Shown: positions 7,623 through 29,325, numbered from the stretch's first letter. The stretch is 64,000 nucleotides of DNA from Trichoplax adhaerens (GCF_000150275.1 NW_002060947.1:6149736-6213735), one strand, 5' to 3'. A program made the numbers and translations. Notes: a model not told the origin generated them from the letters alone.

Positions 7623-10600
7623 ATGCCTAGGAAGAAAACGTCGCCACCAGAAAAGAAAGGATCGAAATTTCTAGCAACTTTTTGTTGCTGCTGTTATTCA
7701 CCACCAGTAAGTGCCGCTAACGTACAAAGTTACAAGTACTATTTTAATTGAATCAATTTTTTTCGCTCCATTTTACTGGTACTTAATATTTGGCAGAAGG
7801 CTTACCAATTCAATCATCCTCTTATATAATTAGAATACAGTCGCCATTAATTCTTCTCTGATAAACAATATATAAGACTTTCAGGCTGAGTTTTATCATA
7901 CAGATTAATGAACTTCTCTAGCAAGGCGTTTTAATAACGGCCTGGTACTTTCCTTTTTAGTAACGCTATGCAACAATTCATTCCTGAACGTAGTTATAAA
8001 TTGATACTCTACAGAATAAGTAAAAAATTCAAAATATAGCATTGTGACGATCCCATTAGACTTTCAAATTGAGTTTTATCATGTAGATTAATGAACTCAT
8101 TTAGCGAGGCATTTTAATGATTACTTTCCGTTTTAGTTATACGCTATCCAACGATTCATTTCTTTCTTTACAAAATTATAAATCGATATTCTACAGAATG
8201 AGTAATGTATTCAAATTAACATTTCAATAATCCCAAAAGGCTTTCAGATCGAGATTTATCACGTAGAATAAAGAACTTGTCTAAAAATTAGGCTAGGTCT
8301 TTACTTTTTCTTCAGTAACGTATCCTACGACTCATTCTCTTCTTATGAAGTTGTAAATTGATATTCTACGGAACAAGTAATGCATTCAAAACATTAGCTT
8401 TCAAATAATCTTGTAAGGCTTTCAGACTGAGCTTTATCATGTAGAAGAAGTAACTCTTGTAGAAACTAAACAAGGCGTTTAATGGCTACTTCCCGTTTAG
8501 TACGCTATCCAACGATTCATTTCTCTATGTGGAGTTATAAATTGATATTCTACAGAATAAGTAATATATTCAAATTAGCATTCTAAACTATATAAAAGAA
8601 TAATAAATAAGTCAATGAAGCCAAGCGCAATGACTGATTCGTATCTACTATTTCCATAGAAAAAAAAATCAAAGGAAAAGTCCAAACTATTAAAAAATTC
8701 TGCCGTGGATGATGATCGCGATGAACTTACTTCATCTTCTGGTGAACATTACCCGATGGAAGAAAACAGCTGCTCTAGTCGAAGCCATGGCGATAATGGA
8801 CCACCTAGCCCAATAACAACTTACGAACAGGTTATTACCAACAGGGAAGAAGAAATCACTTTACCACAAAACTCTGTAAGTCGACGAATAATGATAAAAA
8901 TAAAAACAATTAAAAACGCGGAATAGAATTAATCAGGGATGAAAAATAATTCTAATTTCCGTCACAGCTCATTAATTACCTACTGTAGTGTAAGCAACAA
9001 CTTTCCATACCGCATTAATATTCAACAGTAGTAATACTTCCCTGCATGTGTTTACTAACTTTCAACGAGAAATAACAATACCATTGATCCGAATCTCCAC
9101 CTCCATAAAGAAAATACTGTTTCAATAAAGTTGCCTAGTTTCGATCTACTAAAATCAGTTAACATTGAAGCGGTGTTCTCTTTCTCTTCGATCAATGTAG
9201 TATGTTACCAGAGCTCTAGACGCTAAAAGCGTTGTTGGCTACTACGGTAAAGTATCAGGTAAAATCGATATGGATGATGGAAATAAGCATTATGTCTTCA
9301 AGCAATGGAATGATGTGGTAATGAATAAATTACGTTTATATTATTACCTATTAATAGACCTGCATACTGATCATAATCATTATTACTGAGCAGATTTTTC
9401 AAGATATCAATGTTGGTAAACAAGTAGAAATTTTATTGAGGTGAATTATAATTAAAAGTACATGCCAACATTACAATTTATATATTAAAGAAATAGATGC
9501 TACTGCTTTACTTGTATTAACAAATGTAAACTGATCATGTAGAATTCGTCATGAAAATATCATTAAAGTCTTGGCCTATATTAGAAACGATTCATTTGGT
9601 GGTGTCTTGGAGGAATATTGTCATATCACACTTCATAATCGTTTATTTGATATTGGGGTAAAATATTTGAAAATTGACCGTTAGATAATATAAAATATTA
9701 GAGGTAGAATTAGTAATAATACTAAATATTGAAAGTAGCGCAATCTCATACAAATATTTATGATCTTATTTCAGCCAACAAATAGTGCTGCAGTCTTAGA
9801 TTGCTTTCGACGTTATCGTATCTTGTTTGATATTATGATGGCTTTAAAGTATTTGCACGAGAAAAAGATTGTCCACAATAATATCACCAGGTAATTTGAA
9901 TTGCAAGACTAACCTCAATCTATCATATTTACTTGAAGATAGAATGCACGATATACCATAATTTATTGATCACTAATACCTTCTTTTCTCAATATTGCTT
10001 TTTAACATGTTTATATCTGCCGGCTCCTTCTTGAATTTCATTAACTTGGGATTATCTAGCTATAATATTTTATTAACACAAGAAAATAAAGCTAAATTAA
10101 CTCATGGCGGTTACCAAAGCATATTTTCGGGAATAGATCGTGCCATAGATAAAACATATTTTAAGACAGTTCCAACGAAATTGGAATATTACAGTCCTCA
10201 AGCACTAACCGGTATTTTACAACCAGAAAATGATATCTATAGCTTTGGTGTGGTAAGTTTTCTTATATTTTGAGCTATTCATTGCAAGACTGCCCTTACT
10301 TAGACATCTACGTAAAGATTACTTCAGAGATATGATATTAAGTGATCTAGTTCACTCCTTTTCGCAATCTTCTGCACTTATCCCGCAATATACACAGTAT
10401 ATATCCAAAACCTTTAATTCTACTGAATTGGTTGAGCTCAATAAGCATTTGAAACAAAACCACAATACAGGAAGTAAATAGTGCACTGACAACATTATAT
10501 GATTTTCTGAATATGTTATCTATCAATTAACTTCCAAAACGATACAGACTATTCTCTCAGGATCATCAAACTATGTCGGCGTGTCTCTGTCTCTATAACA

Positions 10601-11982
10601 GAATAGGTTATTAATACGAAACGAAATGCAAACTAATTTATAGCTAATATATATCAATATCAAAGTTACATAGATACTAGTTTAAAAGTACGCAATTTTC
10701 TGTATAAAGATGCAGAAAATGGACAAGATTGTCATCAGAAAGTATGAGTACAAGTTAAATTATCTATAAGAATCTACATAAAGTTGGTCAAGTAAATTAT
10801 CAGTGATATTCAGTTTCTACTTGTGAGCAGATACGGATTTCTTTAACTAAAAGTAACGCATTTCAACAGCTATATCTAAAAATTCATCTTCGAAATAATT
10901 AGAAGCGAATGATAAATATTAAATATATTCTGAAAATCTGTACAACCAATTAGTTTCATAATCGAGCATGAAGTCTTTACGGTATTCCTGAGCGAAGCGA
11001 AGATTTTTAGGCTATTGCGATTCTTATCATGCCCTTTCCAATACATATCTGTCTGAAATTAAAGAGTTTAGTTTTTAATATAATGTAATATGAGTAGCTA
11101 ACACTATGACTAATTAATATTATGAAGAATATCAGGTAATGCTCAATTTTATCGATTTTCACTCTCCGATTACGCATTTATCCGAAAGTAAATAGTTTAA
11201 TTTTAAAAAATTACAGCTATGAGGATGATTCTAAAATTAATATTATTACAGAATACCAGGTATCAATTTAGGCTTTGATTTTGATCTAGATCATTTTGGT
11301 TATGGTTATTGGCAACGAGCCGTACCAGCCTAATAATAAGCAATACCGTTATGCGGTAAGTTGAACTTTTAAACTATTCATGATAGAAAGATTACAGTTG
11401 TTAAGTATTAGTAAAAAGGTTAACCTTAGCAAAAGTTTTCTCTCATGATAAAAAACTTTAGATGTAAATAATTAATAGCTGTTGCAATTACTATCCAGTG
11501 AATGATTACAAATTGCTTTGTGCCATTATGATGAATAAAATTACGTATTCACAAATCATTACTTTAACACATATTTTAAATTATTATGATCGCCTATACA
11601 GATGCGGGTGTTGAGAGAAGATTCAGATTGGTCCATGTTAAAAGATTTTAGGATTAAATGGCCTAAAAATCAAGTATATCCTTCGCGAAAAACATTTCGC
11701 AAAGTTCTATTAAGAACTGCTTATGAATGTGTTAAAAAGAATAAAAATTCAAGACCAACATTAACTGATGTAAGACAAAGCTTTCCATAATTATTTCTGT
11801 TGTCATCCAATTTATTAGATGATACTAATCATTGATTTAAGTGTATCCTAATCACCATTGATCTGTAACAGAAATAAAATTGTTACGATTACAACTTGAT
11901 TAATGGAGATACTTATTTTAATTCTTTCTTTTAGCTAATTGAGAAATTTATCAAGTACGAAGCACGGTACTTCCAAGAATGA
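7623..11982 (+). CDS. IRAK/Pelle-like pseudokinase A (about 389 aa, 10 exons) with an N-terminal basic + CCCC motif
   Basis: Exons 7623-7706, 8660-8875, 9201-9317, 9394-9440, 9543-9657, 9775-9890, 10060-10252, 11290-11355, 11602-11769 and 11935-11982 are GT-AG with consistent phases. Motifs: MPRKKTSPPEKKGSKFLATFCCCCYSPP; GYYGKV; YVFKQ; IRHENIIKV; GVLEEYC; RYRILFDIMMALKYLHEKKIVHNNITSYNILL; KLTHGGY; YYSPQALTG; NDIYSFGV; C...RP. The R..I.....AL.YLH, DIYSFGV and D.R..WP segments are typical of the IRAK/Pelle/RLK group. Confidence 0.85.
7870..8585. repeat. Intronic degenerate tandem array, about 180 bp unit, 4 copies
   Basis: CTTTCAG..TGAGTTTTATCAT and TATAAATTGATATTCTACAGAAT recur near 7876, 8058, 8239 and 8416. 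Confidence 0.85.
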
Positions 11983-12101
11983 TCTAATGTAAATGAATTT
12001 ACATTCAAGGCCAATTATTTGTTGATCGACAACGATATCAAATTTGAACGTAGATTGTGATGTAGGATTACCTAAACTTAATCTTTTGGACTGAAGAAAG
12101 C

Positions 12102-12198
12102 CTAATTATCAATATTTCAAATGCCATGATGTTAAACTATCAAAATTGTCTAATTATCAATATTTCAAATGCCATGATATTAAACTATCAAAATTGTC
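12102..12198. repeat. 48 bp direct tandem duplication downstream of the pseudokinase A stop codon
   Basis: CTAATTATCAATATTTCAAATGCCATGAT[G/A]TTAAACTATCAAAATTGT occurs twice with one mismatch. Confidence 0.9.
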
Positions 12199-14169
12199 CG
12201 TATTACATCTGCATTTTTTAATTCTGTTTTAATATTCTCTATACAACATTGGATTTTATTTTGTACCTTAAAATTGAAGTTGAATTAAGGATGGTTACTT
12301 TGTTAGCTAAATTTGGGGCTAATCTTGTTTTGCTACTAGTAACTGGTATAATTTCTAATTTCAATTTCCGATTGGGACTATGCTTAACCAATACTATTTT
12401 TAATAATTAAATAATCATCATTATATATCGTATTTAACAATTGGTTTATCGACCTAACATTATTTCTCCTTAAGATCTATCATTAGGGTTAATTGTAAGT
12501 AAATGTTTAAAAAGGAACTGTATCTTCCTGCGGTACTTTTACCGAATATTTGGCTTAACTAGCATATTTGATAATATAGAAAGGAATTATTTTGTAGATC
12601 TTGCCAACACTATAGACAGACTGATTGATCTATTCACCTACGATATTTCTTTTATATCACAATTTATAAATTTTATTACAATACGAAGTTCCCATAAACG
12701 GCAGCCTTTAGCTTATCACTTGCTTTAATAAATATGCTTTTTTTTTAAATTTAGATATCAATTCTTGAAAAATATGTAGACTAGATTAAAAATAAATGCA
12801 TCGTGCTTAGTATACTCTACATTGTCAATCAGCACGTAACTTTAATTACGGTAATTTGTTCAGATAGAATACCATACAAGTTTTTCAGGTTTTATTCAGC
12901 AACATACCTTGGAAAATGAAGATTTGATGAAACTAATATGGTTTTCAAGATAGATTAGAAAGTACTTTTACTTTAACCATCTTAACTTGATACAAGGTTG
13001 TACCCACTCTTTCATGATTGCAGCTGAAATTCGTTAAATCATACTATTCAGTATTCACATTATATCGGATCTGTATGTTATCCATCTGTGCAGCATGAAC
13101 GCGTATTTTGCGATCGATAGAAGATGAGAATTAAATTCACAATTTTCCATTTAATGGTTAACTAATTTAATGATGCTAAACCTGGCTGCTCTGATTAACA
13201 GTGAATCAATTGCAATTCATTATTGCAGATATGATAAATTATAGTCATCGCCAAGTGAAACTCGTAGCAAGCCTATATTCATTATCCACATCCTATCAAC
13301 TTTTCTCATCGATAATAATGTACTGTAGAACATATACATCTGATAATAAGAGAAAAAGAAGATATGGTATCACATATGCCCATGCTATTAACTTTTTTCA
13401 TAATCTAAATATCGCATTTAATGGTTCCTATTAAACTGCTAATGGTTAGTGATTCGAATGGGAATACATGAAATTAAACCTCTTCACGTTGATTTTTTAA
13501 AGTAGAATATGATTAAATCTGGTGGAGATCAACTTTATTACCATAAGACTTTATTTCAGTAACCATTCTAATAACAAAGTCTCTCCATGTCGATTACTCT
13601 AAATTAGAAAATCGTGATTTACTACAAAACTTTTTGATAACCATACAGGAGATATATTATATTGTTATATTATGTTATATTTTTTAATACACAACGGATG
13701 CAACATCTAGACTATATTCTTTGTAGAGGGTTAGATTTTCAGTTATTCTCGATAGTAAAATGAACGAATCTGACTTTATAGAGAAAATTATTATTAAAAT
13801 ATTCAGCAAACATAATGAGGCTAACAAACAGATTAAGAGAGGATCACAATCGATTTTGAGAAAGATTTAAATCGACTAGTCCAATAGTAATGTTATCCAG
13901 TCAAATTAGCATACAAACAGTTCAATGCTGACTATTCGTCTCAGTCTATTTATTAATATCTCTCTGATATGGTAATATGAAAGATTGATTATAGCTGGCC
14001 AATTTTATACCGAAATCGGTACTCGTAGGAAAGGAAAAAAAGTTAACGGGATAGAAAGACAAGTGATAATTTTGGCAATAACAATGTCAATCGATTTAAT
14101 AGAACGATAAGTGGACATGTTTATAAAATTGTGAATTAACACTATCTCCAAAGAATTCAATCTTAAATT

Positions 14170-14750
14170 TATCCAATTTGCATTTCTTTATTGATAGATA
14201 ATGGTTGAAATAGAGATCAAGTTTATGAATTTTATGTTTTCTTAATCATCAGATAACTTAATTTCGAGGTTAAGGTATGTAAATGCATTTCTTTATTGAT
14301 AGATAATAGCTGAGATAGAGTTATTAAGTTTATGAGATTTTATATTTTCTTAATCATTAAATGACTTAATTTTAATGATACAGTATCTAAATGCATTTCT
14401 TTATTGATAGATAAAGGCGGAGATAGAGTTATTAAGTTTATGAGATTTTATATTTTCTTAATCATTAAATGACTTAATTTTAATGATACAGTATCTAAAT
14501 GCATTTCTTTATTGATAGATAATGGCTGAGATAGAGTTATTAAGTTTGTGAGTTTTATGTTTTCTAAATCGTTAGATAACTTAATTTTAATGATATCGTA
14601 TCCAAATGCGCTTTCTTTATTTAATAGATAATAACTCAGATAAAGCGATAGTAAGTTTACGAGTTTAATATTTTCCTAATCATCGCATAATTCAATTTTA
14701 AGGTTACGGTATCCAAATACACTTCTTTATTGATGGATAATGACTCCGAT
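14170..14750. repeat. Tandem array, about 107 bp unit, 6 copies
   Basis: AATGCATTTCTTTATTGATAGATAA...GAGATAGAGTTATTAAGTTT recurs near 14179, 14283, 14390, 14498, 14606 and 14717. Confidence 0.9.
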
Positions 14751-16153
14751 AACATGATTATGTTAATAAGTGATTCATCGTAGTTCTATTTCATACTTCA
14801 TTAAATATAGCTACTCGTAGTAGTACATAGACATAAACAAACTGCAATGAACTTGATCAACAAAGAAATTAGGAGTTAATTGACTTAGCCTACAGTAAAA
14901 TTGCAGAAAATGAAGATGATGGAAATTATCAAAACCAATGACCGTTAAATACTAACAAATTTCTGGGTTGTTCATTGTTAAAATCATTTTTAACTCTGAT
15001 TTATCAACTAAATCGTACGATTACGGTCAATATTAGTTGTATCTTTTCCATAAATAGTAAGAGATTGATAGATTAAAAGATAATCACATTAAGTATCAAT
15101 TGTTACAAATGATCGAATTCATCATTGGACCAATAAAAGATCTAGTTTTCGATCATGTTGATCTTACGCATAATTTTGTTTATTTTGTTAATTCGGCTGT
15201 CTTTAACGTCACCGAACGCATAGGATACTTTCATCCCTATAAGTAATATTTCATTTTTAGTGTTTTAATTTGTGTTTTGGATTAAAAGTCCTCTTCAACT
15301 TAAGCTTAATTGTTATCGCAGACTATTTTAAACTGCAAACGGATTAAATATTCGTTGAAGATTCCTTCCTTGGCTGTTGAACATTTTGTCGACATTATCG
15401 ATAAACAGTTTGAAAAAATAAATGTAAGTAGACGGTCCTCCAGATCAGCATTCCAATATCTATGCTATCAAATCTCGGTGATTATGCCATCGTATCGTTT
15501 TTATCATACCTTTTTTCGCACTTTATTGATGGAAAAATGAGTTGAGAGCTAGCTGAAGGATAGCCCGAAAACATCATATCTCTTAAAACAGTTTTGCGTT
15601 TACTTTGAAGAATGGCTATTATCTGATTAACGCAAAGCTTCTATTTTAATTAACATCATTTAATAGCTTATAATATAGTTCATATTGTACGAAGAAGGCA
15701 TTTTTTACCTAGCTACAACGTCTATAATGCCCTTTACACAACTCAAAATAGAAATGTCTTTCTACTGTTAGCGATTACATCATGTTATTCTTCTGCCATT
15801 CGTAGTTATCTTGCTAATTTAATTTTATCAACTAGTAATATTATTATTGATATCCTAAAGTTATGCCTTTATTAATTTCAAAATTTATATGAGGATAATT
15901 CTGTATAAGTAATTCTATGCAGCTTTATATAAGTCTAAATTAAGAAGTATTTACTTGACAGAGGACAAGAATTCTTTTTAATTGATGCGTAAATTATAAA
16001 GATCTGGGATAATATTAATAGGGTTTTAAGATATTACAATGATTTAATGATCAATGACATTAATCGAATCAACTTAAGCTGATCATAACATAAAATTGTA
16101 ATCCTATCAATTTTTGCCTATCTTTCCAAAATTGAAGAAGTTTAAGAAAACCG

Positions 16154-19100
16154 ATGGAAAAAAATTCTGATAACGAAGAGCCAAAAACCACAATATGTTG
16201 CTGTTGTTTTACCAAGGTTAGTTTGATCTATTGCTTATAATAAGATTGTTAAACAACTGCTATTGCAATATAATGAATTAACTGAAAAGTTATTCTATAA
16301 TACGAGTGTATGTGTTATATATCATGATATTAATCACAATCAATAATAAATCTCGGTCATCACTTTTCACTCCATTTTTCTTGTGGTTTTCATCATATTT
16401 CTTTTGGTATGAAATCTGTGATAATAATCCATAATAGACTCTAGAGTGTAAATCTTTTCAAATCAAGATTTTATATCATCGGTTACTAATATCGCAATCT
16501 TCAAAACGTAAATCACAATTACTAAAATTAAAACCCTATCCAAGTTAATTGAACATTCAAAATTAAATACTCATATATATGCACTGAATGCTTATTCAGT
16601 ATTGATACCATTGGAATAATCGCCGTGCCACTCGATTAAAAATGCCTCATTTTACATTAAAATTTGAATTTGTTATCATCCGAATAAGCAGCAGATTGTT
16701 AAAGCTGTAACAACTTTTCGGTAGCTTTCGTTTCAATTTCTTACTGAAATTCACAAGAAAATTTTGTTCACTTTTTTTGTCTCATTAATCGCTTAATTTT
16801 TGAACTTTAACAGCGAAATAAGAAACAGACTACGTACCAGCAAAAACTGATCGTTTATCGTTCACGAAATACAGAAAATGACCAGTTGCTCATGTCTGAT
16901 AGTGGTGTATCATTATATAGTGATTCTGATGCTGAAAGTACCATCGATGGAGTTGTAGAATCTTCAAATTGTTCAACCCAAGAAACAGATCGTAGAGATG
17001 ATGAACCAGAAGTAGCTGAATCTAAAGTGCTATTAGAAAAGGTACGTGATTACTGGCGATTAAATTAATTTACTCCTTGAGAATCGCTCTCATGCATAAA
17101 TCAGTATGGCCCATGTTGTGAACGTGTCTCCCCTACCCCTATCTGAAATAGCGTCGTCTGTATATATCTATAAAGGTTACTAATGTTAGCGGCTTGCAAG
17201 AGAAATTTTTCGTGATTTCTCTCCAAAGTCCCTGCTTAAGTACTTATGGACGCCATCGTTGAATACTTGCAACTGTACTTGAGTTTACTCCATTACTATA
17301 GGGCGAGTATACGTTGTGCCATGGACTACTAGATATATCTCTATCAGTGACTACTCAACTAAGATTCGCCCTCCCCTCCAAGCTGCAACTAAACATTTTT
17401 TCCCTTATGCTACAAAGAAAAAACAGAGACTACTTCAGATTTCCCCTGCAAGCTTTGAGGAGGAAATCTTAGCTGAGTAGTCCTATTCTTCGTGTTCCCT
17501 TGTTACCGCCATTACTGCTAAAGCCCGGCCAGTTTCATCCTGTACGTTTTTGTATGGGCAATTCTTAACATGACTTGAAAAGAAGGTCTGTAGTAAATGC
17601 TACCTGGAAATTTTACTGTCGACAGTAAAACATGTCTATTTGCCAGGCTAATTGCGTTGTTGCATAATTTCTAACTGTTAATTACAAACATTTCCTATGA
17701 GTTTTTATATACGTTTCAACACTCAGGACAGTGCTACCTACTACTATAAATTTCACTACACAGTACTTTAATGTCAGTATTAACCATACCCATAATCCAG
17801 TATATTAATTACTCAGATCACTGTATACTATTCTCCTTGACGGTAAGCTCAGTGATTTAGACTCGTCTTGAGACTCTGAAAAATTTCAGGATTTCTATTT
17901 AGGTTATTCTTCGAGAAGTACACACCGAGCGGCCAATAACAGAGCTGATCTATAACGTCGATAATTCGTATACTGCAGACAAGAGACGCCAATCCATTAG
18001 CTAGTAATGCATCGTATACTGACCAAATCACATTTACATTTTAGCGATCGTATTATCTACTGTATATACTATACCATACTAGTACATTGACTAGTGGCCC
18101 ATAGCCAATATTCAATTGGCTACCCTCAAATTGGGAGTAGTTCATTGTAAATTCATTGCATGTGTATGTGCATCACTGAGGAATAAATCGATTTAAAAGG
18201 TCGAATTGAGTTGATTTACACCAACGAGAGAGAGCAAGCGAATAGACTACCGTGATATCAACTAGTGCGAAATGATAACTATAATGGATAAGAATCACAG
18301 GCGAAATTCAAAAGTTAATAAATCAGATAAACCACATTAATAGCAACTATAAATAGAAAGTATAGCTATAGTTATACCGGAATGACGACAATTCGATTAT
18401 TAATAAGGTGCAAACAAATTGCTGACCATGAGAATCGCAATTATCTCTTAATGCTGTAGCATGAACCATCCTAATATTGTTCGAGTCTATCAATATTATC
18501 AAAATAAAACACTTCATGGTGTTATTGAAGAATACTGCTATTACAGCTTACACTTTGTCATGCTTAAGGTAACTGATAAATTATTCTTTCATTTCAATTT
18601 ATCAATTTATTATCCTCTATTGCTTGTTAAATCGCATTGTAATAAAGAAAATATAGGCCTTTGCTGACTATTTTATTCTTGATGCTAGTCTCCTAAAGAA
18701 GTTCTATCCTGCCACGATCGAGTTCGAATCCTGCTATCCATATCTCGAGCTCTAAATTATCTGCATAACCGTGACATTGTACATAATAACTTAACAAGGT
18801 ATCAATTGATTATCAACAAATTGTTTCAATAATTGAAATACCAGCTGAATGAATTCTTTTCAATGAATCTATTTCCAGCGATAATATACTTATTAATCGT
18901 GAAAATGTCATCAAAATTAGCCATGGCGGATATCACAGTATTTTCAACCACGTCAATCGTGAAATTATAGCTAACGATCTGCGATTTAAATGCCATGCTC
19001 AAGGCTATTACAGCAAGGCTGCACTACATGGTAAAGTGCAATTCGATAACGATGTCTACAGTTTCGGAGCCGTAAGTTTTATTATATGCTTGTAGCTTAG

Positions 19101-19870
19101 CTAGATTATCTAAAGTGAAAGTGTAGACAGTATTCCCTGAGTTGAGTACAATTTCAAGTTAGGCCAAATTGCAGTAAATCTGCTATAATTAGCTCTAATA
19201 AATGCTGAGCTATAATTGACAATAAATCTATTCAGCACGTACTTTCATGCTGCAAGAGGAGAAATAGAATAAGCAACTCATATTATATACTGCTTGATTA
19301 GGCTTTATTTTTAATGGTAAGAGGTGAGGAATATTATAGTGGAGAACAAGAATATCTACAGAACGTAAGTTAAGCTTCAATGGGTACAACACATAATGTA
19401 TCTAATTCATCTTGATCAGATGTTATTCATATTGCAAAGATTAATTTATCTAAGTATACAACTATGATATATCATCAACATTTCGCTTTAATACAACTTT
19501 AGAAAGATTTACTGAAGTCTGAATCCAACTGGTCCCAATTAAGAGATACACGTATCGTTTATTGGCCTAAACTGCCTACATCATGGTCATCCCTACGTAC
19601 TTTATCAGGTAAAGCTTCTGGTAAAAATCTCAGAAAGGACATGTTAAAATTATCAAGGCGTTGTCTCAAACAAGTACGATCAAGACCTCGAACAATCAGC
19701 CAAGTAAGTTGTTATTAAAGTTGATCAAGTTTAATGAATATTCTTAGTAATTAAGAGCAGAAAGTTTGAACGCATTTGAGTAAAAAAAGGATAGTTTTCT
19801 TAATTATTATCTGCGTATTTCTCCCTAGGTAAAGGCTAAGATAGAAAATTGGGAATTGATCTATTTCTAA
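16154..19870 (+). CDS. IRAK/Pelle-like pseudokinase B, tandem paralog of A (about 357 aa if the tentative exon is used), N-terminal CCCC motif
   Basis: Exons 16154-16216 (MEKNSDNEEPKTTICCCCFTK), 16814-17041, tentative 17903-17967, 18460-18568 (MNHPNIVRV..GVIEEYC), 18689-18798 (RVRILLSISRALNYLHNRDIVHNNLTS), 18879-19071 (DNILI..KISHGGYHSIF..NDVYSFGA), 19302-19364, 19503-19703 and 19829-19870. Intron positions and phases in the kinase C-terminal half match paralog A, and the HGG-containing exon is 193 nt in both. Confidence 0.8.
17349..17482. mobile_element. Putative MITE-like foldback element in an intron of pseudokinase B
   Basis: GACTACTCAACTAAGATT (17349-17366) and AATCTTAGCTGAGTAGTC (17465-17482) are inverted repeats with 1 mismatch. 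Imperfect pairing continues inward (CCCCTCCAAGCTGCA / TGCAAGCTTTGAGGAGG). Confidence 0.5.
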
Positions 19871-20936
19871 AGCTTATGCAAATTTTCAACTTGAGTTTCA
19901 GTTTTATTTTTTTAATCCAAATTGGTTATTGATTAAGAAGCGCCTTCGATACGTTTCTTATATCATGGTTAGTTTCTATTTTGGCCATTTATGATAGTAA
20001 GAATAGCTTCATCCAAGATGAAATTGGGGATAAAATATTATTAAATCTTGATTCTACGTTACGGCAATATTGTAATACTAGCTGTATTATAGCTAAAGCT
20101 TCCATGGGCTAGCCGGAAATGTAGCTAAACCGAATACCGGCAAATAAATTAAATTATATCATCAATGTTGCGAGTAGAAAAATGAGCGTATCTCTTTTAC
20201 TAAAAGGGATTTATATACAATGAGCATGTTAATCAATATGTGATATTTTAACAAAGTTAGGATCTTTCTATAATATTAAATCTTAGCTCCATGTCACAGT
20301 AAATATTATAATTATGCTAGTCCTCGTCAAAAAAAAAAAATACAGAATTACAGTATCTGCTCTTCGCTTAATTACGAGTATTCTGGTTGAATAAAGATCG
20401 AAATATCATCTCTCTACTTGAAAATTCTCTCCAGTCATTGTTTCTAACTCTCAACTGCAGACTGAAAATTTGAAAATATCAAAGTTGCTCTCTAATAATA
20501 CAGCTCTAAACATTGGGCCAAATCTACAGTCGCATTAAACTACCTACATTACGTTATATTCTTTGAGCAAAGATATAAAACATCATCTCTCTGATAGTAT
20601 AACTTTGACAAGATGCCACTGCATATATAGTAGTTCAATATCAATTTTTATAACAAAAATACAGTTAACACTTGATTAATAATTAATTAGGCTAGATGGA
20701 TGTTCACTGTGAAAGTTATATCGTTGCTAAACCTTATGGGTGATGTAAGCGCTGAAATAATTAAAAAATTCAAATTTGCAAAGTTTGATATAAAATTATT
20801 TAAACTGGCCGATTTGGTTATTCAAAACTGACTCCAATAACTCTATAACCGTACTTGAATTCTCTCCTATTTTAAAACAGAAATATCAATATGGAAGTTG
20901 CGTGCTAATAGCCCAACTCGAACTGTTTTGAGCAAA

Positions 20937-21901: not shown

Positions 21902-24900
21902 ATGACCATGGCGAGACGACTACAACACGTAATCTATCAGACCGGAAGGATCCCACGTTTAATCTCATCACCGAATGTAAGATGCAAATAAGAACTGTTT
22001 TTGTTTACAATCAGTGAACATCGGTTGATCAATCAATTCCATGTCATGATAGCATGATAATGATGACTGTAGAGCCATTTTTGATCATGGCGATGTTGGA
22101 TTGGGATCGATTACAACAATTCCTGTCACGATGATCGTCTTGATCGAGACGACTACAACACGTAATCTATCAGACCAGGATGATAGCACGTTTAATCTCA
22201 TCATCGAATGAAAGATGCAATGAGAATTATCTTTGTTTACAATTCGTGAACATCGGTTGATCAATCGATTCCATGTCATGATAGCAAGATGATGATGACT
22301 GTAAAATCATTTTTCATCACGGCGATGTTTGATCGGGATGGATTGCAACAATTCCCGTCATGGTAATCGCCTTGATCAACGCAGTAACATGAACATCATC
22401 GGGGTCAAGTCAAGATTATCCATCTTGCAATGATGATAATAAGGCGTATCGAATTCATTTTTTTTTTTTTTTTTTTCAATCATTAGATCCATCGAGTAAC
22501 CCCAACAGCTGTTACCGGTATGATGCAGATTAAACACTTTTCTATCCATGAACATCAAAGTATGCAACTACTAGATCAACATGGCATTCGTACGCCTCAA
22601 AGTCGAGTAGCTACAACGCCAATTCAAGTTCATGAAGTAGCATCCACGTTAGGTATGAATTTGTAAGCCATTGGATAGGTTAAAAACTAGACTTTTCTTG
22701 CATGATCTAACTTAAAATAGATGTACTTGATGATAATCGATGATCCTTTTTCTTTCAAAATATCAAAGTAAACGACTTATGTTTATTTATTTGCGTACCA
22801 TTGGATTGATTGATTGATGATGAGGCATTTTACATCGTCTAGCTTAGTTAAAAAGTGTAGTATATCTACGTGGCGATAATGAATCGATGATCCTTTTTTC
22901 ATTCTAAATGTTAAGATTAATGACTAATATTCATTTATTTATACGCCATTGAATAGGTTAATGATTTGACATTTTTTGACATCGTCTAGCTTAGATAAAA
23001 AGTACAACGTGTACTTGGTGATAATATTAATATAACTGATCATTCTTTTTCTTTCTAAATGTCAAGATTGACGTTAATGTTCAATCGTTTATACACCATC
23101 GAATAGGGAATGACTAGACATTTTTACATCGTCTAACTTAGATAAAAAAGTACAATATGTACTTGGTAATAATTGCAATATCAATCGATCATTCTCTTTT
23201 CTTTCTAAATGTTAAAGTTAGTGCTTAATGTTCTTTCATTTGCACGCCATTGAATAGATTAATGATTAGACACTTTTTTACATCGTCTAGCTTAGGTAAA
23301 AAGTATAATATGTACGTGGTGGCAATTTTGATATAATCGATCATATTTTTTTCTTTCTAAATGTTAAGATTAACATGTCATATTCACTGACCTGCAGCTA
23401 TGTTTTATTTACTGCAAGATCGAATGATCCGGCTGTAATCAATTTTATTCTCCATGTTAACAGTTTAAGAATGATTCTTATAGTATAGACAACATCGTTA
23501 ATGGTAGTCAAGACGATATTTTCCCTCTATAGTTCTTTCTACTTTCTCAATCGTCTTGTTTTCTTGTTGACCTAAGATATTGAAACTAGTCAAGTAGCGT
23601 TACTTTAGTCACAGTAGTAAACGTACTCTTCACTGAAGATCTAATTGATGCTATTAGAACACTTAGTAGTATAATGTAATTGAGAATATACTTCAAGTGA
23701 AAACAGTAGTGAACAAATATCTCAATCGTCTTATTTTCTTGCTGAGCTAAGATACTGATTCAAGTCAAAGAGCGTACTTTTAGCAGAGTAATAAATATAT
23801 TGCCCACTGAAGATCTTACTCATGCAGTTAGAATACTTGGCAGAACAACATATTTTAGAATAGGCCCTTAATCGAAGACAGTAGTGAATGCCTCGTATTT
23901 TTTTTTCTCCGATACCAAAATAATAGTAAACTATTGGATTAGGATAGTATGTAGGATTACTTCTACAAGAATAAGATAGGACCCAATCGGTACTACACTT
24001 TGAACGAGCTATCTTGGTAGTTGGTACCATTATACGAGTACCATTGACATTTGGATTATTATTTATTTCTACGGCAATAAAAATGCCATATATTGATTTA
24101 GGTACTACATTTTGAACCATCTATCATAATGTCGTTATACAAGTGCTTTTAAGCAAAAACACTTTAATTGAGATAGAGTTAAATTTAATGTTTTTGCATC
24201 AATGTTACTCATGGACAGGCAGCAAAGATGTTGTTGTAAAAGCACAAGTCTTGGCTGGTGGAAGAGGTAAAGGCCTCTTTGAGTCCGGTTTAAAAGGAGG
24301 TGTGAAAATTGCCTACTCGTAAGTAAAGTATTGCACACAAACCGATAAAAGTTGGTGCCAAAGGAAGGCATACCTTCTACAAAATAATATTCATTCGTGA
24401 TTCTTACAATTCTCTAAAGCTAAATTTAAAACAATGACTACGTTATTTAAAGTTCTAGCTTGATTCGTTTAAAAAACATCTAGAAATAAATTGGCTATTA
24501 GATGAATCATAGGAAAATAGTACTTCTATTTTTCGTAGTTTATTGAATCCAATGTTAAAGCAAAGACGACGAAATCCGTTAATGCACTCGTATATATGTC
24601 GTTTACCGTATAGATAATCGATCATTTTGTAAAATGACTGATGGTGCAGTTAAATAGTTTGGCATGCAGTTATAAGGATACATGATAAACTTACCAGCTA
24701 CTGTTTGTTCGTAATGTAGACCTGATGAGGCTAAAACTATTGCAGCTAATATGCTTGGTCACAAATTAATCACGAAGCAGACAGGAGGGGCTGGGGTGCT
24801 ATGTAACAAGGTCAGTATCAGATGGTAATTTAATTCGAACTAATTTTTGACTAGCGTTATTCTGTAAAGCAGTCCCAAATTCGTTTAAGATTAAAATACA

Positions 24901-27450
24901 GAGTCATTCTGAACTGATTGCATATAAGGATGAATTTTACTGTAATAATTTAGATAATCTGATTGAAGCTAAATAGTCTTTGTTAATTGCAAGATGAAAT
25001 CTAATTTCTGTAATAATGTGAAGTTTACCAGAAACTGTAGTTCTTGTTCTATTATTCGGAAGATATTCTATTACCATTCCAAATGGCAACGAAAGAGACT
25101 TAACTTATTTTCTTGCATGAATATGCCCAAATGGCGATAATTATATTTATTTCAATTTTTAGCTCTCATTAATTGCAATACCACACATTTGCATTCGCTT
25201 AGGTAATGGTGTCGGAACGTTTATATCCTCGACGTGAGTACTATTTTGCCATTACTATGGACCCAACATCGATGGTTAGTCTGTACAAGAGACATAATAT
25301 CTACAGGCAGAGTTATTTCAGATTAAATGACATTGACAAATGATGCTATTAGGGCCCTATTATTATTGCCAGTAATCAAGGAGGTGTAGATATAGAGACA
25401 GTTGCAGCCGAAACACCTGAGGCAATTATTAAGCAACCTATTGATATTATCGAAGGTAGATAAAATCAAGCCTGTGATTCAGAATCGAATAGATTGTGCT
25501 TTGTCAGCTAGCAATAAATTTGAGAACTTAATCTTTGATATGATAATAAATTAAATGTTACGACGAAAACTATTGCTAATATAAAGTATTAATTGGATGG
25601 CTTGAGTATTAAACTATCTTACTTGTTGATTTTATATATTATTTCGTACCAAATTTCAAGGCCTAAATCGGGACACCGCATTATCTATAGCACGTAAAGT
25701 AGGCTTTGGTCCGGAATATATCGATCAGGTATACAATTTTGTTGGACATTATTGACTTAAATACAATAATCAACCGTAGCAAGATTCACAGTAGTTAGTT
25801 ATTGCCTGATACCTAATTTAATAAACTAAATTTTCAAAAATATAACGCTTCTAATTGTATATTACGGGATTCTATTATTATTTAGGCGACTGATATCATT
25901 CAAAAGTTATATAGCGTATTTATTGAGAATGATGCGCTGATGGTGGAAATTAATCCAATGACCGAAGATAGCAATGGAAATGGTAAGTTGATGCTTTACA
26001 TCGTATGTTGTAATAGTAAATATAGTGAGTACCAGCATAATCCTATGTAAAGAGTATTTTATTCTGATATTTGTAAAGATTGGATAAGAAATTCTTATAT
26101 TCATACCAATGTTGACTAAATTTTTCTGTGTTGTTGTCATTCGTTCGAATTAGTATATTGCATGGATGCCAAAGTAAAGCTAGATACGAGTGCGCTATTT
26201 CGTCACAAAAATTTAGCTGAATTGCGCGATTGGAGTCAAGAGGATCCTCGTGATGTCGCAGCTTCCAAAGCAGATCTCAATTATATAGGATTAGATGGAT
26301 CTATCGGTTGCTTGGGTTTGTCATAATTTATGGGCATCATTTCATTACTTGTATATTTTCACTGTCTCTAACATTAGAATATTAAATGGTAGCGCATAGG
26401 ATCTAAATAACATCCATCTATTCCTAATGGATTTAATATAAATAAATGTTACCTATATCTGCTGAAATAGCTAATGTTTCCATGCTGACCTTAAATTAAC
26501 TGCCATTTACAGGTAATAGCTAATTTTGCAATATTTACGCAAAGTTTTCAATTTTAATTAGTTAATGGCGCTGGTTTAGCAATGTCTACTATGGACATAA
26601 TCAAACTACATGGAGGTTTACCTGCCAACTTTCTAGATGTGGGTGGCGGTGCTACAGCTGATCAAGTTACTCAAGCATTTCAGATTATTAGTAGCGATCA
26701 GCACGTAAGTTTTTTCTTTTATAACCATCTTAATGTTGATCGTGCTAAATTTTATCCGCCTAAATAACAACGAATAATATTACATAAAGCCACATAAATA
26801 ATCTATTCTTTTTATTTATAACTTACTTGCTTCCACGGCACTCATTCAGGTCAATGCTGTTTTAGTTAACATATTTGGTGGTATAATGCGTTGTGATGTT
26901 ATTGCAAAAGGCATTGTTGCTGCCGCTGATCAATTGAAACTTAAAATTCCCATAATTGTACGATTGCAAGGTAACGATAGAAACGAATAGAATGGCATAC
27001 ATATACCATGTGCAATGGTGCATGTCGTTAACCACTACATACGCGTATATATATAGTACCCATTTCTACTCGAAATTAATGTCTCTAAGCTTAATATTTT
27101 CAATAGTGATCATCTTATACGCATATATATGTTCAATTTCTCATCTAGGAACTCGTGTAGAAGATGCCAAGGCCGTTATTGGTGCTAGCAAATTTCATAT
27201 ATTATCCTGTGATGATCTTGATGAAGCAGCTAAGCTGGTATTAATGCTCGAGCATATTGACAAATGAGAAATTAGATACAGTAGTAGCTATGAATTTTAT
27301 TCAATTGCTTGAGAATAAAATATATTCATTCAATAGACAAACTGCCTTAAGTTTACTTTGTTAATTTGTTTCTAGGCTGTCAAAGTAGCTAGCATTGTGA
27401 GCCTAGCAAAAGAAGCTTCCGTTGAGGTTGATTTCACTTTACCGATTTAA
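21902..27450 (+). CDS. SUCLA2: Succinyl-CoA ligase [ADP-forming] subunit beta, mitochondrial (13 exons)
   Basis: Exons about 21902-21976, 22487-22652, 24219-24318, 24720-24810, 25203-25274, 25353-25455, 25661-25728, 25886-25982, 26154-26315, 26562-26704, 26850-26970, 27149-27237 and 27376-27450. Motifs [84 protein letters not shown] and the C-terminus VEVDFTLPI* match SUCLA2 rather than SUCLG2. The Arg-rich N-terminus fits a mitochondrial transit peptide. Confidence 0.95.
21910..22380 (+). repeat. About 232 bp tandem duplication containing SUCLA2 exon 1 and the start of intron 1
   Basis: CGAGACGACTACAACACGTAATCTATCAGACC.G.A.GAT...CACGTTTAATCTCATCA occurs near 21912 and again near 22145. Confidence 0.9.
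22690..23375. repeat. Intronic degenerate tandem array, about 150 bp unit, 4-5 copies
   Basis: ACATCGTCTA[G/A]CTTAG recurs near 22833, 22980, 23127 and 23281, each followed by TTCTAAATGT.AAG. Confidence 0.85.
23540..23900. repeat. Intronic degenerate duplication, about 175 bp unit
   Basis: TCTCAATCGTCTT..TTTCTTG.TGA.CTAAGATA and CACTGAAGATCT occur in two copies starting near 23545 and 23720. Confidence 0.7.
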
Positions 27451-29325
27451 AAGCCATGCAAATATCTACCGAATTTCTAATAGAGCTTTAAGTTAGACTG
27501 GAATATTTCTATGCATTTACCGTATTTAATATGTAGTGAGATAAAATTTAAATTAATCTATCCGAGAGATATTGCAATTATCTTGGTTTATCCACAAATT
27601 CTAGATACAGGAATACTCATATTTTGCAAATTTATAGAAGCAATAATACGATCTACTGTATACTAATTTAAGAAAATATAACTTACGACGAGTAAAATAT
27701 TATCTGTGCAACGAAAGTATATCAGATCTTGCTAAGCATGAATGTTTACGTGTAGTAAATAAAATGAAGAAAACAATTGCAATCTTACTGAAACGTTTTG
27801 TTGATGTAGTTAAGATCGCAGATTGTTATACTTCTTAAAAACATCATTTAAAGCAAACCAATTTGATTATGAAAGCAATAAAATTTTAGCAATGAGGTAT
27901 ATGATGTCTTCTGGGATTCATAATTGCAACTCCAACAATGAACTTTATACATTCGTCATTTGTGACCTTGGAGGAAATTAACATATCTTTTACCACAAAT
28001 GCTACGTCTACAATATATGATTGTTATTGTAGGGACTTAATTTCGAAATAAATGGGCATCACAGCCTACTAGAATTTTAAGTTGTAGTCTTCATATATAA
28101 TTTACTATAGTTATCAAATATGCAAATACATAGCAATATAAACTTGATTTTATATCTAAAATCTAGGGATTAGCGATGTGTAAATGGGAACTCAGCATAT
28201 TAGAATTTAAATTGTATTCTGTATAATTTTACTGCAGTTATCAAATATGTGAATAAACAGTAATATTCTGTAAATTTGATTTTTAAATTCACAGCGTAGG
28301 ATCAGCAATGTATAAATGGGAGCTACACAATGTAGAGTATCAGTGATGCATAGTATCAATTTATTCGTTTCTTGCTGAAACAAGATATTACAAAACATGA
28401 TATGCCATTGATATATTACTTCAATATTCTTATTCTCTTGAAAACTGGGATATCTATTATTCTTTAGTGAGCAGCCGTAGTTACAGGAGTAATCTATTTG
28501 CATATGACAAAATAGATGCGATTATCATGGTATATTGTCATCCATCATTGAATGGAATAGAATAACGATTATTTTTTGGTGTGGGTTGTATAATCATAGA
28601 TAAAAATAAATGTTATATTGTTATAATTACGATTGATTAGATCCAATCAACAATAAATCAGATGCATATAGTATAGTTATACATGTTGCTGGACATATTT
28701 TTTCATCAAATATTGCTTATCTATTGTAAGAGCTATTATGGTATCAATAATGATCCGTGAATGATCAGTAAATGATACTTGCCATTCAGAAATGCGATAT
28801 ACGATTAATAAAAGGCTGTCAGTATTCTCGATGCTCTTGTATCGACTAAGGGAGTTTACTCAAACTAAAACTAACCTAAAATTCTAGTGATGAACTTATA
28901 ATTTGTCAGATTAAAATTGTAAGCTATATGTATTCGGTCCTTCACAAACAGTGTAATGATATCCTAGCTATAACACGTCCAGCCATATTGGTAGGAACTA
29001 TTACTATGACTAATACAGCAACAGCTAAAATTTTCTCATGCCAAACACTTAAAAAATAAGAATATATGTATGGCACGATAGGAATTTAATGAATTACAGA
29101 ATGATAACTTTTAATCATGTAATGATTTAATATTAATGCGACAAATATGTGAAGACCGACAACATTTATAATTTAGTATTTTCGTCAATTTTAAACTGTC
29201 AAAACAAATTATAACCAGCCTTGTATGTTACCAGTACACTATACTGCCTGACTGAAAAGATACAATTTTGTTCCTATATTGCTTATTCTTTGTTCAACCG
29301 TTGCTAAATGTAGAGCAATAAAGAA

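What the first reader, a model, noticed from the sequence alone, without database searches (positions are those of the whole stretch)
7623..19870. Tandem pair of death-domain-less IRAK/Pelle-like pseudokinases with a shared HNN/HGG signature
Seen: two adjacent same-strand genes with matching intron positions. They are strongly diverged overall yet carry the same non-catalytic motifs: HRD..K -> HNN[I/L]TS, DFG -> HGG within HGGY.SIF, and GV[LI]EEYC (Glu at the gatekeeper position). APE is degenerate (SPQ / SKA). Gene A also has Gln in place of the alphaC Glu. Established: loss of the HRD Asp and the DFG Asp defines pseudokinases, and animal IRAKs (including the pseudokinases IRAK2 and IRAK3) normally carry an N-terminal death domain and a Tyr gatekeeper. 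Inference: intact frames plus conserved replacement motifs point to selection on a non-catalytic role (scaffold, allosteric partner, heterodimer or decoy). This could be an undescribed pseudokinase subfamily that an ORF scan misses because the exons are short.
Basis: partly seen in the sequence, partly recalled or inferred. Interest (0 to 1): 0.85.

Follow-up and report, generated by a model that had tools for sequence, protein, structure and literature searches.

The report
Lipid-anchored dead IRAK-like kinase pair
Two neighbouring Trichoplax genes encode conserved, catalytically dead IRAK-type kinase-fold proteins that start with a cysteine cluster (a likely fatty-acid membrane anchor) instead of a death domain. 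They belong to a 12-gene family found only in placozoans, and the reference genome lacks 950 bases that hold two exons of the second gene.

Summary
The motifs are real. Gene A (7623-11982) and gene B (16154-19870) each have 10 exons with the same intron phases and are 36% identical. Both carry HNN for HRD, HGG for DFG, GV[LI]EEYC, and SPQ or SKA for APE. Both start with a CCCC exon and have no death domain.

One correction: in this assembly gene B is not intact. A 950-bp stretch holding exon 3 (glycine loop, beta3 lysine) and exon 4 (alphaC) is missing at 18288/18289. The Trichoplax sp. H2 assembly, one DNA-like run and the spliced RNA contigs of three studies all contain it, so the natural gene is whole and expressed.

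Both genes are under strong purifying selection (B dN/dS 0.07; A pN 0.09 against pS 0.81). They belong to a 12-gene placozoan family of dead kinases. The family profile matches IRAK4 best, then plant receptor kinases.

Death-domain-less IRAK-like kinases in placozoans were published in 2019, and this scan met related clusters on other DNA (s1-739324, s1-739344, s1-756297). The dead-kinase signature and the cysteine anchor of this subfamily are in none of the papers I could search.

Most likely role: membrane-tethered scaffold or allosteric partner, in the manner of plant RLCK pseudokinases. Gene A's transcription was not tested directly.

The parts
7623..7706 (+). Gene A exon 1: 28 codons ending in the CCCC cluster; phase 0
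   Evidence: ATG preceded by in-frame TAA at 7617-19; GTAAGT donor. 100% identical in H2.
8660..8875 (+). Gene A exon 2: polybasic start (KKKSKEKSK), then an acidic, Ser-rich linker of 72 codons
   Evidence: AG/GT boundaries; no Pfam match; 100% identical in H2.
9201..9317 (+). Gene A exon 3: glycine loop (GYYGKV) and beta3 strand with the Lys kept (VFKQW)
   Evidence: aligns to the family.
9394..9440 (+). Gene A exon 4, alphaC mini-exon (15 codons plus AG); Gln where B has the alphaC Glu
   Evidence: Shortest of three nested, stop-free AG..GT candidates (starts 9358, 9391, 9394) that end at 9440 with the needed phase; only this one gives 389 aa, the H2 model's length. Aligns with B's exon 4.
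9543..9657 (+). Gene A exon 5: IRHENIIKV ... GVLEEYC (Glu aligned to the gatekeeper)
   Evidence: gatekeeper register from the HMMER alignment of paralogue P0001 to IRAK4.
9775..9890 (+). Gene A exon 6: alphaE and catalytic loop HNNIT, ending in AG of a split Ser codon
   Evidence: Kept as HNNI in distant orthologue L023.
10060..10252 (+). Gene A exon 7: catalytic-loop Asn kept (YNILL), THGGY in place of DFG, SPQ in place of APE, DIYSFG
   Evidence: 76% DNA identity and 77% protein identity (P0006) to L023, with HGG kept.
11290..11355 (+). Gene A exon 8: second half of alphaF (22 codons, ...GNEPY...)
   Evidence: The family-like candidate among the stop-free phase-0 AG..GT candidates; GTAAGT donor.
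11602..11769 (+). Gene A exon 9: C-lobe (alphaG to alphaI), ends ...SRPTLTD
11935..11982 (+). Gene A exon 10: 15 codons plus stop
   Evidence: With it the model totals 389 aa and ends where the H2 gene call ends (L021 1617-5977, 389 aa).
16154..16216 (+). Gene B exon 1: 21 codons with the CCCC cluster
   Evidence: In-frame TGA at 16133-35 upstream. Spliced 16216/16814 in an RNA contig of X7. Identical to P0026.
16814..17041 (+). Gene B exon 2: linker of 76 codons, predicted disordered
   Evidence: RNA contigs of X5, X6 and X7. AF2 pLDDT is below 50 for residues 1-90.
18288..18289 (.). Site where the reference lacks about 950 bp that carry gene B exon 3 (glycine loop, beta3 Lys) and exon 4 (alphaC)
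   Evidence: H2 contig L021 12120-13069 has no counterpart here or elsewhere in the assembly. The X1 contig has 952 letters at this joint. The X5 loose end equals the H2 sequence. RNA contigs of X5, X6 and X7 carry 161 letters between exon 2 and exon 5.
18460..18568 (+). Gene B exon 5: MNHPNIVRV ... GVIEEYC
   Evidence: Joints 17042->18458 and 18566->18687 (cut +2) in three RNA runs.
18689..18798 (+). Gene B exon 6: catalytic loop HNNLT plus AG of the split Ser codon
   Evidence: Joints in three RNA runs. HNNL kept in L024.
18879..19071 (+). Gene B exon 7: SHGGY in place of DFG, SKA in place of APE
   Evidence: Joints in three RNA runs. HGG kept in L024.
19302..19364 (+). Gene B exon 8: alphaF second half (21 codons)
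   Evidence: Joints 19071->19302 and 19364->19503 in three RNA runs.
19503..19703 (+). Gene B exon 9: C-lobe
   Evidence: joints; identical to P0026.
19829..19870 (+). Gene B exon 10: 13 codons plus stop
   Evidence: Joint 19703->19829 in three RNA runs.
15385..15535 (+). Approximate 5' untranslated exon of gene B (end not fixed)
   Evidence: X6 and X7 contigs carry 146-152 loose letters before 16128. Their first letters lie at window 15385.

Best explanation
Genes A and B are two old paralogues of a placozoan-specific family of about 12 genes. The proteins are about 390 aa long. Each consists of a short N-terminal exon with a cysteine cluster, a disordered linker, and a kinase fold of the IRAK/Pelle/RLK lineage.

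The kinase fold has lost the catalytic Asp (HRD to HNN) and the metal-binding Asp (DFG to HGG). It has Glu at the aligned gatekeeper position. It keeps the beta3 Lys, most of the glycine loop and the catalytic-loop Asn.

Shown here: the motifs, the gene structures, B's transcription and splicing, strong purifying selection on both genes, the family's extent, the nearest solved relatives, and the absence of a death domain.

Inferred: the cysteine cluster (with a polybasic stretch in A) is S-acylated and holds the protein at a membrane. There the dead kinase domain would act without catalysis, as a scaffold or allosteric partner of the active placozoan IRAK-like kinases. At least one of those, read here, carries a lipid-anchor motif. 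This is how plant RLCK and RLK pseudokinases and vertebrate IRAK2/IRAK3 work.

Gene B's apparent break in this window is a defect or rare allele of the reference assembly, not a property of the gene.
For: - Motifs and exon models.
- B is spliced in RNA contigs of three studies, and 161 letters (exon 3 plus exon 4, 164 nt less 3 nt of alignment overlap) lie between exons 2 and 5. B's model equals H2 protein P0026.
- A's model sums to 389 aa and shares start and end with the H2 gene call.
- Selection. B against L024: 203 codons, pN 0.081, pS 0.60, dN/dS 0.07. A against L023: 96 codons, pN 0.087, pS 0.81. A against H2: dN/dS 0.20 from 9 changes.
- Family. Six genes have HNN plus HG[GC], five have HN[ND] plus [AS]DGC, and one has HEN plus SDFG. 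In the 10 members where the upstream catalytic-loop exon was recovered, the phase-2 catalytic-loop intron was seen or suggested by the reading frame (DNA checked in 4: A, B, L031, L035). Three HRD/DFG genes in the same cluster lack it.
- An exhaustive HMMER scan of 1.84 billion proteins with the exon-7 profile gave only 24 hits. The best nine and five weaker ones belong to the family (the named ones are all Trichoplax; the rest are unnamed ENA/Logan ORFs). The named non-family hits are plant receptor kinases and one crinoid protein.
- Family profile against PDB: IRAK4 at 116 bits, plant RLKs at 97, IRAK3 at 89.
- The AF2 model's best Foldseek matches are IRAK4, B-Raf and IRAK3.
- The ESM Atlas structure neighbours are plant inactive receptor kinases, TM 0.80-0.83.
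- Cysteine clusters occur in A, B, P0001, P0002, P0009, P0013 and P0017. An active cluster gene starts MGNGCSC.
Against: - Acylation, membrane location, lack of catalysis and any binding partner are all untested.
Reads were laid on B.
- Gene B alone scores CDPKs (59.6 bits) above IRAK3 (50.8) in PDB, and Foldseek does not separate IRAK4 from B-Raf. The IRAK assignment therefore rests on the family profile and on paralogue P0001.
- No tree with reference kinases could be built.
- The AF2 model is only moderate (mean pLDDT 62).
- The beta3 Lys, the glycine loop and the Asn are kept, so nucleotide binding or unusual chemistry is not excluded.
- The organism behind contigs L023 and L024 is not identified.
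Confidence: 0.6

Rival explanations
1. Decoy or guardee. The dead kinases mimic the active lipid-anchored IRAK-like kinases and are watched by death-domain or NLR-type sensors, as plant ZED1/PBS1-type RLCKs are watched by NLRs. They would report attack by microbial effectors.
For: The family grew by tandem duplication beside active IRAK-like genes. Paralogues have diverged far (24-48% identity) while orthologues are conserved. A Death-domain match lies 3 kb from paralogue L005/L028 on the opposite strand.
Against: No sensor gene is linked to A or B, and no Death match lies in the window. Strong purifying selection on orthologues fits a fixed partner at least as well as an arms race. No interaction was tested.
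Confidence: 0.15
2. The proteins keep an unconventional enzymatic activity, or act as nucleotide-gated switches, using the retained beta3 Lys, glycine loop and catalytic-loop Asn.
For: Lys (FKQW), GxxGxV and the Asn of HNNxTxxN are invariant across the family. The solved IRAK3 pseudokinase binds ATP-gamma-S (entry 6ziw).
Against: Both aspartates are gone in the six HNN/HGG members, and APE is degenerate. A Glu at the aligned gatekeeper position would put a charge at the back of the pocket.
Confidence: 0.1
3. Gene B is truly broken in the sequenced reference strain. The 950-bp loss is a real deletion allele, so only gene A is functional there.
For: The window reads straight through 18288/18289 without N. 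The missing bases are nowhere else in the assembly. Short similar words (TAAGAA / AGTAAG) lie at both edges.
Against: All four runs laid, from four studies under two organism labels, and the H2 assembly carry the segment. None shows the deletion joint. The other exons of B are identical to H2 with one synonymous change, which would not be expected of a decaying gene. The segment is rich in TA repeats, a common cause of loss in clone-based assemblies (my own knowledge).
Confidence: 0.15
4. The family is not IRAK-related. It would be a fast-evolving offshoot of another kinase group whose IRAK4 match is a long-branch effect.
For: P0026 alone matches CDPKs best. Foldseek E-values for IRAK4 and B-Raf are alike. 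The feature search of the ESM Atlas lists mixed kinase clusters.
Against: The profile of seven members puts IRAK4 19 bits above the next family, and plant RLKs and IRAK3 follow. P0001 alone gives IRAK4 at 4e-17 against 2e-11 for B-Raf. The nearest non-family hits of the exhaustive scan are plant RLKs. The only other genes of this genome that match the exon-7 profile are HRD/DFG kinases with the ATNNFS...GxGGFGxVY signature of IRAK/RLK kinases. They lie in the same cluster and share the intron after YS[FY]G.
Confidence: 0.07

Closest known systems
Death-domain-less IRAK-like kinases of placozoans (Kamm et al. 2019, BMC Genomics 20:5, PMC6321704)
   Same: Same phylum, same lack of a death domain, and tandem clusters of lineage-specific paralogues with IRAK or plant-RLK best hits.
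   Different: The paper does not use the word pseudokinase (0 occurrences). Its passages on IRAK and its Table S2, the parts I read, mention neither motif loss nor an acylation signal. The Swiss-Prot best hits of its nine listed genes (IRAK2, At1g01540, IRAK4 three times, SD16, CRCK2, EMS1, MSP1) do not match the product names of this family (SRF6, LYK5, PXC2, SRK, LRK10L-1.3, LecRK-I.3). A and B therefore seem not to be among them. I could not map locus tags to accessions.
Vertebrate IRAK2 and IRAK3 (IRAK-M) pseudokinases
   Same: IRAK-lineage kinase folds without the catalytic Asp that act as scaffolds or regulators. IRAK3 is among the best sequence and fold matches.
   Different: Those have an N-terminal death domain and a Tyr gatekeeper (established knowledge). 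A and B have a Cys-cluster exon and Glu at the aligned gatekeeper, and have also lost the DFG Asp. Identity is only about 18-21%.
Plant receptor-like cytoplasmic kinases and inactive receptor kinases (BIK1/PBS1-type RLCKs; ZED1, BSK, STRUBBELIG, LYK5-type pseudokinases)
   Same: An IRAK/Pelle/RLK kinase fold, with no ectodomain in RLCKs, held at the membrane by N-terminal acylation. Many members are catalytically dead and work as scaffolds, co-receptors or decoys (established knowledge). Plant RLKs are the nearest non-placozoan sequence hits. Plant inactive RLKs are the nearest predicted structures.
   Different: Different kingdom. The anchor is a run of cysteines about 15-24 residues from the start, not an MGxxxS/C motif (except P0013, which starts MG). 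The HNN/HGG/Glu-gatekeeper set is the family's own. Common descent of the architecture, as opposed to convergence, is not shown.

Membership tests
Animal IRAK family | Kinase domain closest to IRAK1-4 among kinases | tested here: inconclusive
   The family profile A2 gives IRAK4 at 116 bits against 97 for the next family, and P0001 gives IRAK4 at 4e-17. Gene B's protein alone ranks CDPKs above IRAK3, and Foldseek does not separate IRAK4 from B-Raf. No reference tree was possible.
Animal IRAK family | N-terminal death domain | tested here: not met
   No PF00531 match in the window's range. Only kinase domains are found in the paralogue proteins and in the partial gene B model P0007. In-frame stops lie upstream of both ATGs. 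B's RNA contigs add only a 5' untranslated exon. Residues 1-90 of B are predicted disordered.
Animal IRAK family | Tyrosine gatekeeper | tested here: not met
   In HMMER's ungapped alignment the second Glu of VLEE lies on the IRAK4 gatekeeper Tyr. Six of seven aligned family members have Glu there.
IRAK/Pelle/RLK superfamily (TKL group) | Best sequence and structure matches within IRAK, Pelle and plant RLK kinases | tested here: met
   PK_Tyr_Ser-Thr and Pkinase both match.
Pseudokinase | Loss of the catalytic Asp (HRD) and the metal-binding Asp (DFG) | tested here: met
   HNN and HGG in A and B, kept in distant orthologues.
Pseudokinase | No phosphotransfer activity | not testable with these tools
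   Needs purified protein.
RLCK-like architecture (acyl-anchored IRAK/RLK kinase fold without ectodomain) | N-terminal acylation motif; no signal peptide, transmembrane segment or other domain | tested here: met
   CCCC in exon 1 of A and B, followed by basic residues. Cys clusters in six of the seven aligned members. No other Pfam domain. This is motif presence only.
RLCK-like architecture (acyl-anchored IRAK/RLK kinase fold without ectodomain) | Actual S-acylation and membrane location | not testable with these tools
   Needs acyl-exchange chemistry and imaging.
Placozoan HNx pseudokinase family (defined here) | Phase-2 intron inside the catalytic loop, HNx catalytic loop, and HG[GC]/xDGC/SDFG in place of DFG | tested here: met
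   A and B share these features with the other members. The catalytic-loop exon was recovered for 10 of the 12.

The most novel reading that the evidence does not exclude
Placozoans run an animal counterpart of the plant RLCK system. Lipid-anchored active IRAK-like kinases would be paired with a dedicated, conserved set of lipid-anchored dead paralogues, A and B among them. The dead ones would serve as obligatory allosteric activators, specificity adaptors or guarded decoys at the membrane, replacing the death-domain (Myddosome) mode of IRAK recruitment.
Probability: 0.2. Interest if true: 0.7.

Novelty: new variant of a known kind. Interest (0 to 1): 0.42.

Why it matters
How IRAK-type signalling works in animals that lack death-domain IRAKs (placozoans, and reportedly cnidarians) is an open question raised in the 2019 placozoan immunity paper. 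A conserved, expressed family of membrane-anchor-type dead IRAK-like proteins gives concrete candidates for the missing recruitment or regulatory step. It also offers a possible parallel with plant RLCK pseudokinases. On the practical side, the reference T. adhaerens assembly lacks 950 bp of gene B. That explains the truncated public model TRIADDRAFT_56729 and would mislead any kinome survey based on that assembly.

Tried and rejected
- Hand-built exons that proved wrong. A 'TTIRLLI' exon for B at 18331-18408 is intron in H2. For A, the candidates 'LFIARLP...' at 10275 and 'YEDDSK...' near 11215 were replaced by 11290-11355. A stop at 11788 was replaced by the donor after 11769 plus exon 10.
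- The search for homologous proteins with P0001 and with the family alignment found almost none of the known members and then listed bacterial kinases. Its word filter is too coarse for this family, so I drew nothing from it.
- Foldseek against PDB confirmed a TKL-type kinase fold but could not rank IRAK above RAF.
- The feature search of the ESM Atlas gave mixed kinase clusters.
- Exon-wise scores do not show that A and B are each other's closest paralogues. A is as near to P0001 as to B.
- Searches for the TRIADDRAFT identifiers and for 'pseudokinase' with 'Trichoplax' found no paper on this family.
- Left out: any search, fold or complex prediction with a joined full-length model of gene A. 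It was examined exon by exon, by reference only. As a result A's H2 protein id could not be obtained and an A:B complex was not attempted.

Full report
WHAT IS THERE

The window is AT-rich eukaryotic DNA with short exons. It is contig C1410:6149736-6213735 of a 105.6-Mb, 1414-contig assembly. Proteins encoded here are named Trichoplax adhaerens in public records.

Reading the frames and testing splice candidates by phase gives two + strand genes of 10 exons each.

- Gene A exons: 7623-7706, 8660-8875, 9201-9317, 9394-9440, 9543-9657, 9775-9890, 10060-10252, 11290-11355, 11602-11769, 11935-11982. This makes 389 codons, all with AG/GT boundaries.
- Gene B exons in the window: 16154-16216, 16814-17041, then 18460-18568, 18689-18798, 18879-19071, 19302-19364, 19503-19703, 19829-19870.

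Intron phases are identical in the two genes. The proteins are 36% identical overall and 39% over the kinase exons.

All the motifs are present:
- HNNIT/HNNLT followed by a Ser codon split AG|C
- THGGYQSIF and SHGGYHSIF in place of DFG
- GVLEEYC and GVIEEYC
- YYSPQAL and YYSKAAL in place of APE

HMMER's ungapped alignment of paralogue P0001 to IRAK4 puts the second Glu of LEE on the gatekeeper Tyr. In A's alphaC mini-exon a Gln stands nine residues before the His of IRHENI. B has Glu at that position.

The beta3 Lys (FKQW), a GxxGxV glycine loop and the catalytic-loop Asn are kept in every member. Both proteins start with a short exon bearing CCCC. A follows it with KKKSKEKSK.

THE CORRECTION: GENE B IS INCOMPLETE IN THIS ASSEMBLY

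The Trichoplax sp. H2 protein for gene B (P0026 = RDD41894.1, 390 aa) matches every window exon at about 100%. The exception is residues 98-152, the glycine loop, beta3 and alphaC, which find nothing in the window.

The H2 contig (L021) aligns to the window at 97.5-99.4% identity but carries 950 extra bases between window 18288 and 18289. Those bases hold exon 3 (L021 12751-12867) and exon 4 (13018-13064). They occur nowhere else in this assembly.

I laid four runs from four studies on 15900-19950:
- A DNA-like contig of X1 has 952 letters at exactly this joint.
- X5 has a loose end at 18288 that equals the H2 sequence.
- The spliced RNA contigs of X5, X6 and X7 carry 161 letters between exon 2 and exon 5. 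That is exon 3 plus exon 4 (164 nt) less 3 nt of alignment overlap.

The same contigs confirm every other intron of B. No run shows the deletion joint. The natural gene is therefore whole and transcribed. The reference either lost the segment in assembly or represents a rare allele. This also explains the truncated public model TRIADDRAFT_56729, which starts at MNHPNIV.

NO DEATH DOMAIN

- No PF00531 match lies in the window's range, although the genome has 118 matches.
- Pfam finds only a kinase domain in the paralogue proteins and in the partial gene B model P0007, and nothing in A's linker.
- B's transcripts add about 150 nt of 5' sequence from near 15385. An in-frame TGA at 16133-35 precedes the ATG.
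- A's ATG is preceded by TAA at 7617-19.
- AlphaFold2 predicts residues 1-90 of B to be disordered.

SELECTION

- Against H2, gene A has 5 synonymous and 4 non-synonymous changes (dN/dS 0.20). Gene B has one synonymous change.
- Two metagenome contigs carry clear orthologues from a much more distant source. That source is presumably another placozoan, but the organism is not identified.
- A against L023: 96 codons, pN 0.087, pS 0.81.
- B against L024: 203 codons, pN 0.081, pS 0.60, dN/dS 0.07. Intron positions are kept.
- HNN and HGG are kept in both.

The A/B duplication is older than that split.

THE FAMILY

An exon-7 profile finds 12 pseudokinase genes in this genome:
- Six have HNN plus HG[GC]. 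All are on C1410: A, B, three near 6.585-6.604 Mb, and one at 2.547 Mb.
- Five have HN[ND] plus [AS]DGC, on C1414 at 2.74-2.79 Mb.
- One has HEN plus SDFG, on C1410 at 6.567 Mb.

For 10 of the 12 the catalytic-loop exon was recovered upstream. DNA inspection shows a phase-2 intron inside the loop in A, B, L031 and L035. Three HRD/DFG genes lying among the C1414 members lack that intron but share the intron after YS[FY]G. These three have the ATNNFS...GxGGFGxVY signature of IRAK/RLK kinases, and one begins MGNGCSC. Cysteine clusters head six of the seven aligned family proteins.

An exhaustive HMMER scan of 1.84 billion representative proteins with the exon-7 profile returned only 24 hits. The best nine and five weaker ones belong to the family. 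The named ones are all Trichoplax and the rest are unnamed ENA/Logan ORFs. The named hits outside the family are plant receptor kinases and one crinoid protein. By exon-wise scores A is as close to P0001 as to B, so the pair is an old duplication.

CLASSIFICATION

- The profile of seven members hits IRAK4 first in PDB (E 1e-32, 116 bits). Plant lectin and LysM RLKs follow at 97 bits, GCN2 at 94 and IRAK3 at 89.
- P0001 alone gives IRAK4 at 4e-17 against 2e-11 for B-Raf.
- Gene B's protein alone ranks CDPKs (59.6 bits) over IRAK3 (50.8).
- The AF2 model of P0026 (mean pLDDT 62, core 70-90) matches IRAK4, B-Raf, IRAK3 and plant RLKs about equally by Foldseek.
- The ESM Atlas's own model is nearest to plant inactive receptor kinases such as STRUBBELIG family members and At2g26730, with TM 0.80-0.83.

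I file the family in the IRAK/Pelle/RLK superfamily. I do not file it as a member of the animal IRAK family proper, because the death domain and the Tyr gatekeeper were tested and not met. A tree with reference kinases could not be made, since no tool supplied those sequences.

WHAT IS KNOWN

Kamm et al. 2019 (PMC6321704) state that Trichoplax has several IRAK-like genes, all lacking the death domain, and many in a tight cluster of placozoan-specific paralogues. Their Table S2 lists nine genes. The paper never uses the word pseudokinase. The product names of the present family do not match the best hits in that table, but I could not map locus tags.

Searches for the gene identifiers and for pseudokinase with Trichoplax found nothing on this family.

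Earlier notes of this scan describe related clusters on other DNA:
- an 11-gene IRAK-like cluster in which half the genes are dead (s1-739324)
- lipid-anchor exons (s1-739344)
- the paralogue at 2.547 Mb (s1-756297, s1-756298)
- the CCCC exon of this same pair (s1-784861)

I treated these as leads. What I checked myself agrees with them.

MECHANISM

Shown: dead catalytic motifs, a conserved fold, conservation of the replacement motifs, expression of B, and N-terminal cysteine clusters.

Inferred: S-acylation at the cysteine cluster, helped by the basic stretch in A, tethers the protein to a membrane. The dead domain then works as a scaffold or allosteric partner of the active IRAK-like kinases. 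This follows how IRAK2/IRAK3 and plant RLCK/RLK pseudokinases work (established knowledge of those families).

Rivals: a guarded decoy, residual or unusual catalysis or nucleotide switching, a real null allele of B in the reference strain, and a non-IRAK origin.

LIMITS

VERDICT

This is a real, conserved and partly already public gene family. The pair adds a distinct dead-kinase subfamily with a probable lipid anchor, and it exposes a defect in the reference assembly. Interest is moderate.

Noticed in passing
window 17835-17880 (intron 2 of gene B): Contigs of X1 and X7 end here, with about 150-255 unlike letters on both sides. Other strains appear to carry a different or extra sequence at this place.
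   Followed up: no
window 19508 and 19610 (gene B exon 9): Contigs of X1, X6 and X7 read T>G at 19508, which changes Asp to Glu. X1 and X7 also read T>A at 19610. X5, the window and H2 agree with each other. The runs labelled organism A therefore represent a lineage distinct from both assemblies.
   Followed up: partly
window 17042-18288 (intron 2 of gene B): The RNA run X5 has contigs over much of this intron (17042-17571, 17585-17731, 17930-18288). This could be unspliced RNA or DNA carry-over in that library.
   Followed up: no
window 8138-8574 and 14179-14742: Tandem repeats: a 178-bp unit in 2.4 copies (by eye about four copies from 7880) in intron 1 of gene A, and a 108-bp unit in 5.2 copies between the two genes. 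H2 differs in copy structure there (overlapping BLAST pieces).
   Followed up: no
G000 C1414:2755957-2756151 (+), 2763997-2764185 (+), 2795298-2795486 (-); loci L036-L038: Three apparently active IRAK-like kinase genes (HRD, DFG, PPE, ATNNFS...GGFGEVY) lie among the dead family members. The L037 gene starts MGNGCSC, a myristoylation plus palmitoylation type motif.
   Followed up: partly
G000 C1410:2549816-2550046 (-): A Death-domain match (24.7 bits) lies 3 kb downstream of, and convergent with, the family paralogue at 2546747 (L005/L028).
   Followed up: no
window about 22700-28250 and from about 30100 (from H2 gene calls on L021): The next genes downstream are a succinyl-CoA ligase beta-type gene (+) and a Tec/Btk-type tyrosine kinase (-). 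No functional link to the pair is evident.
   Followed up: no
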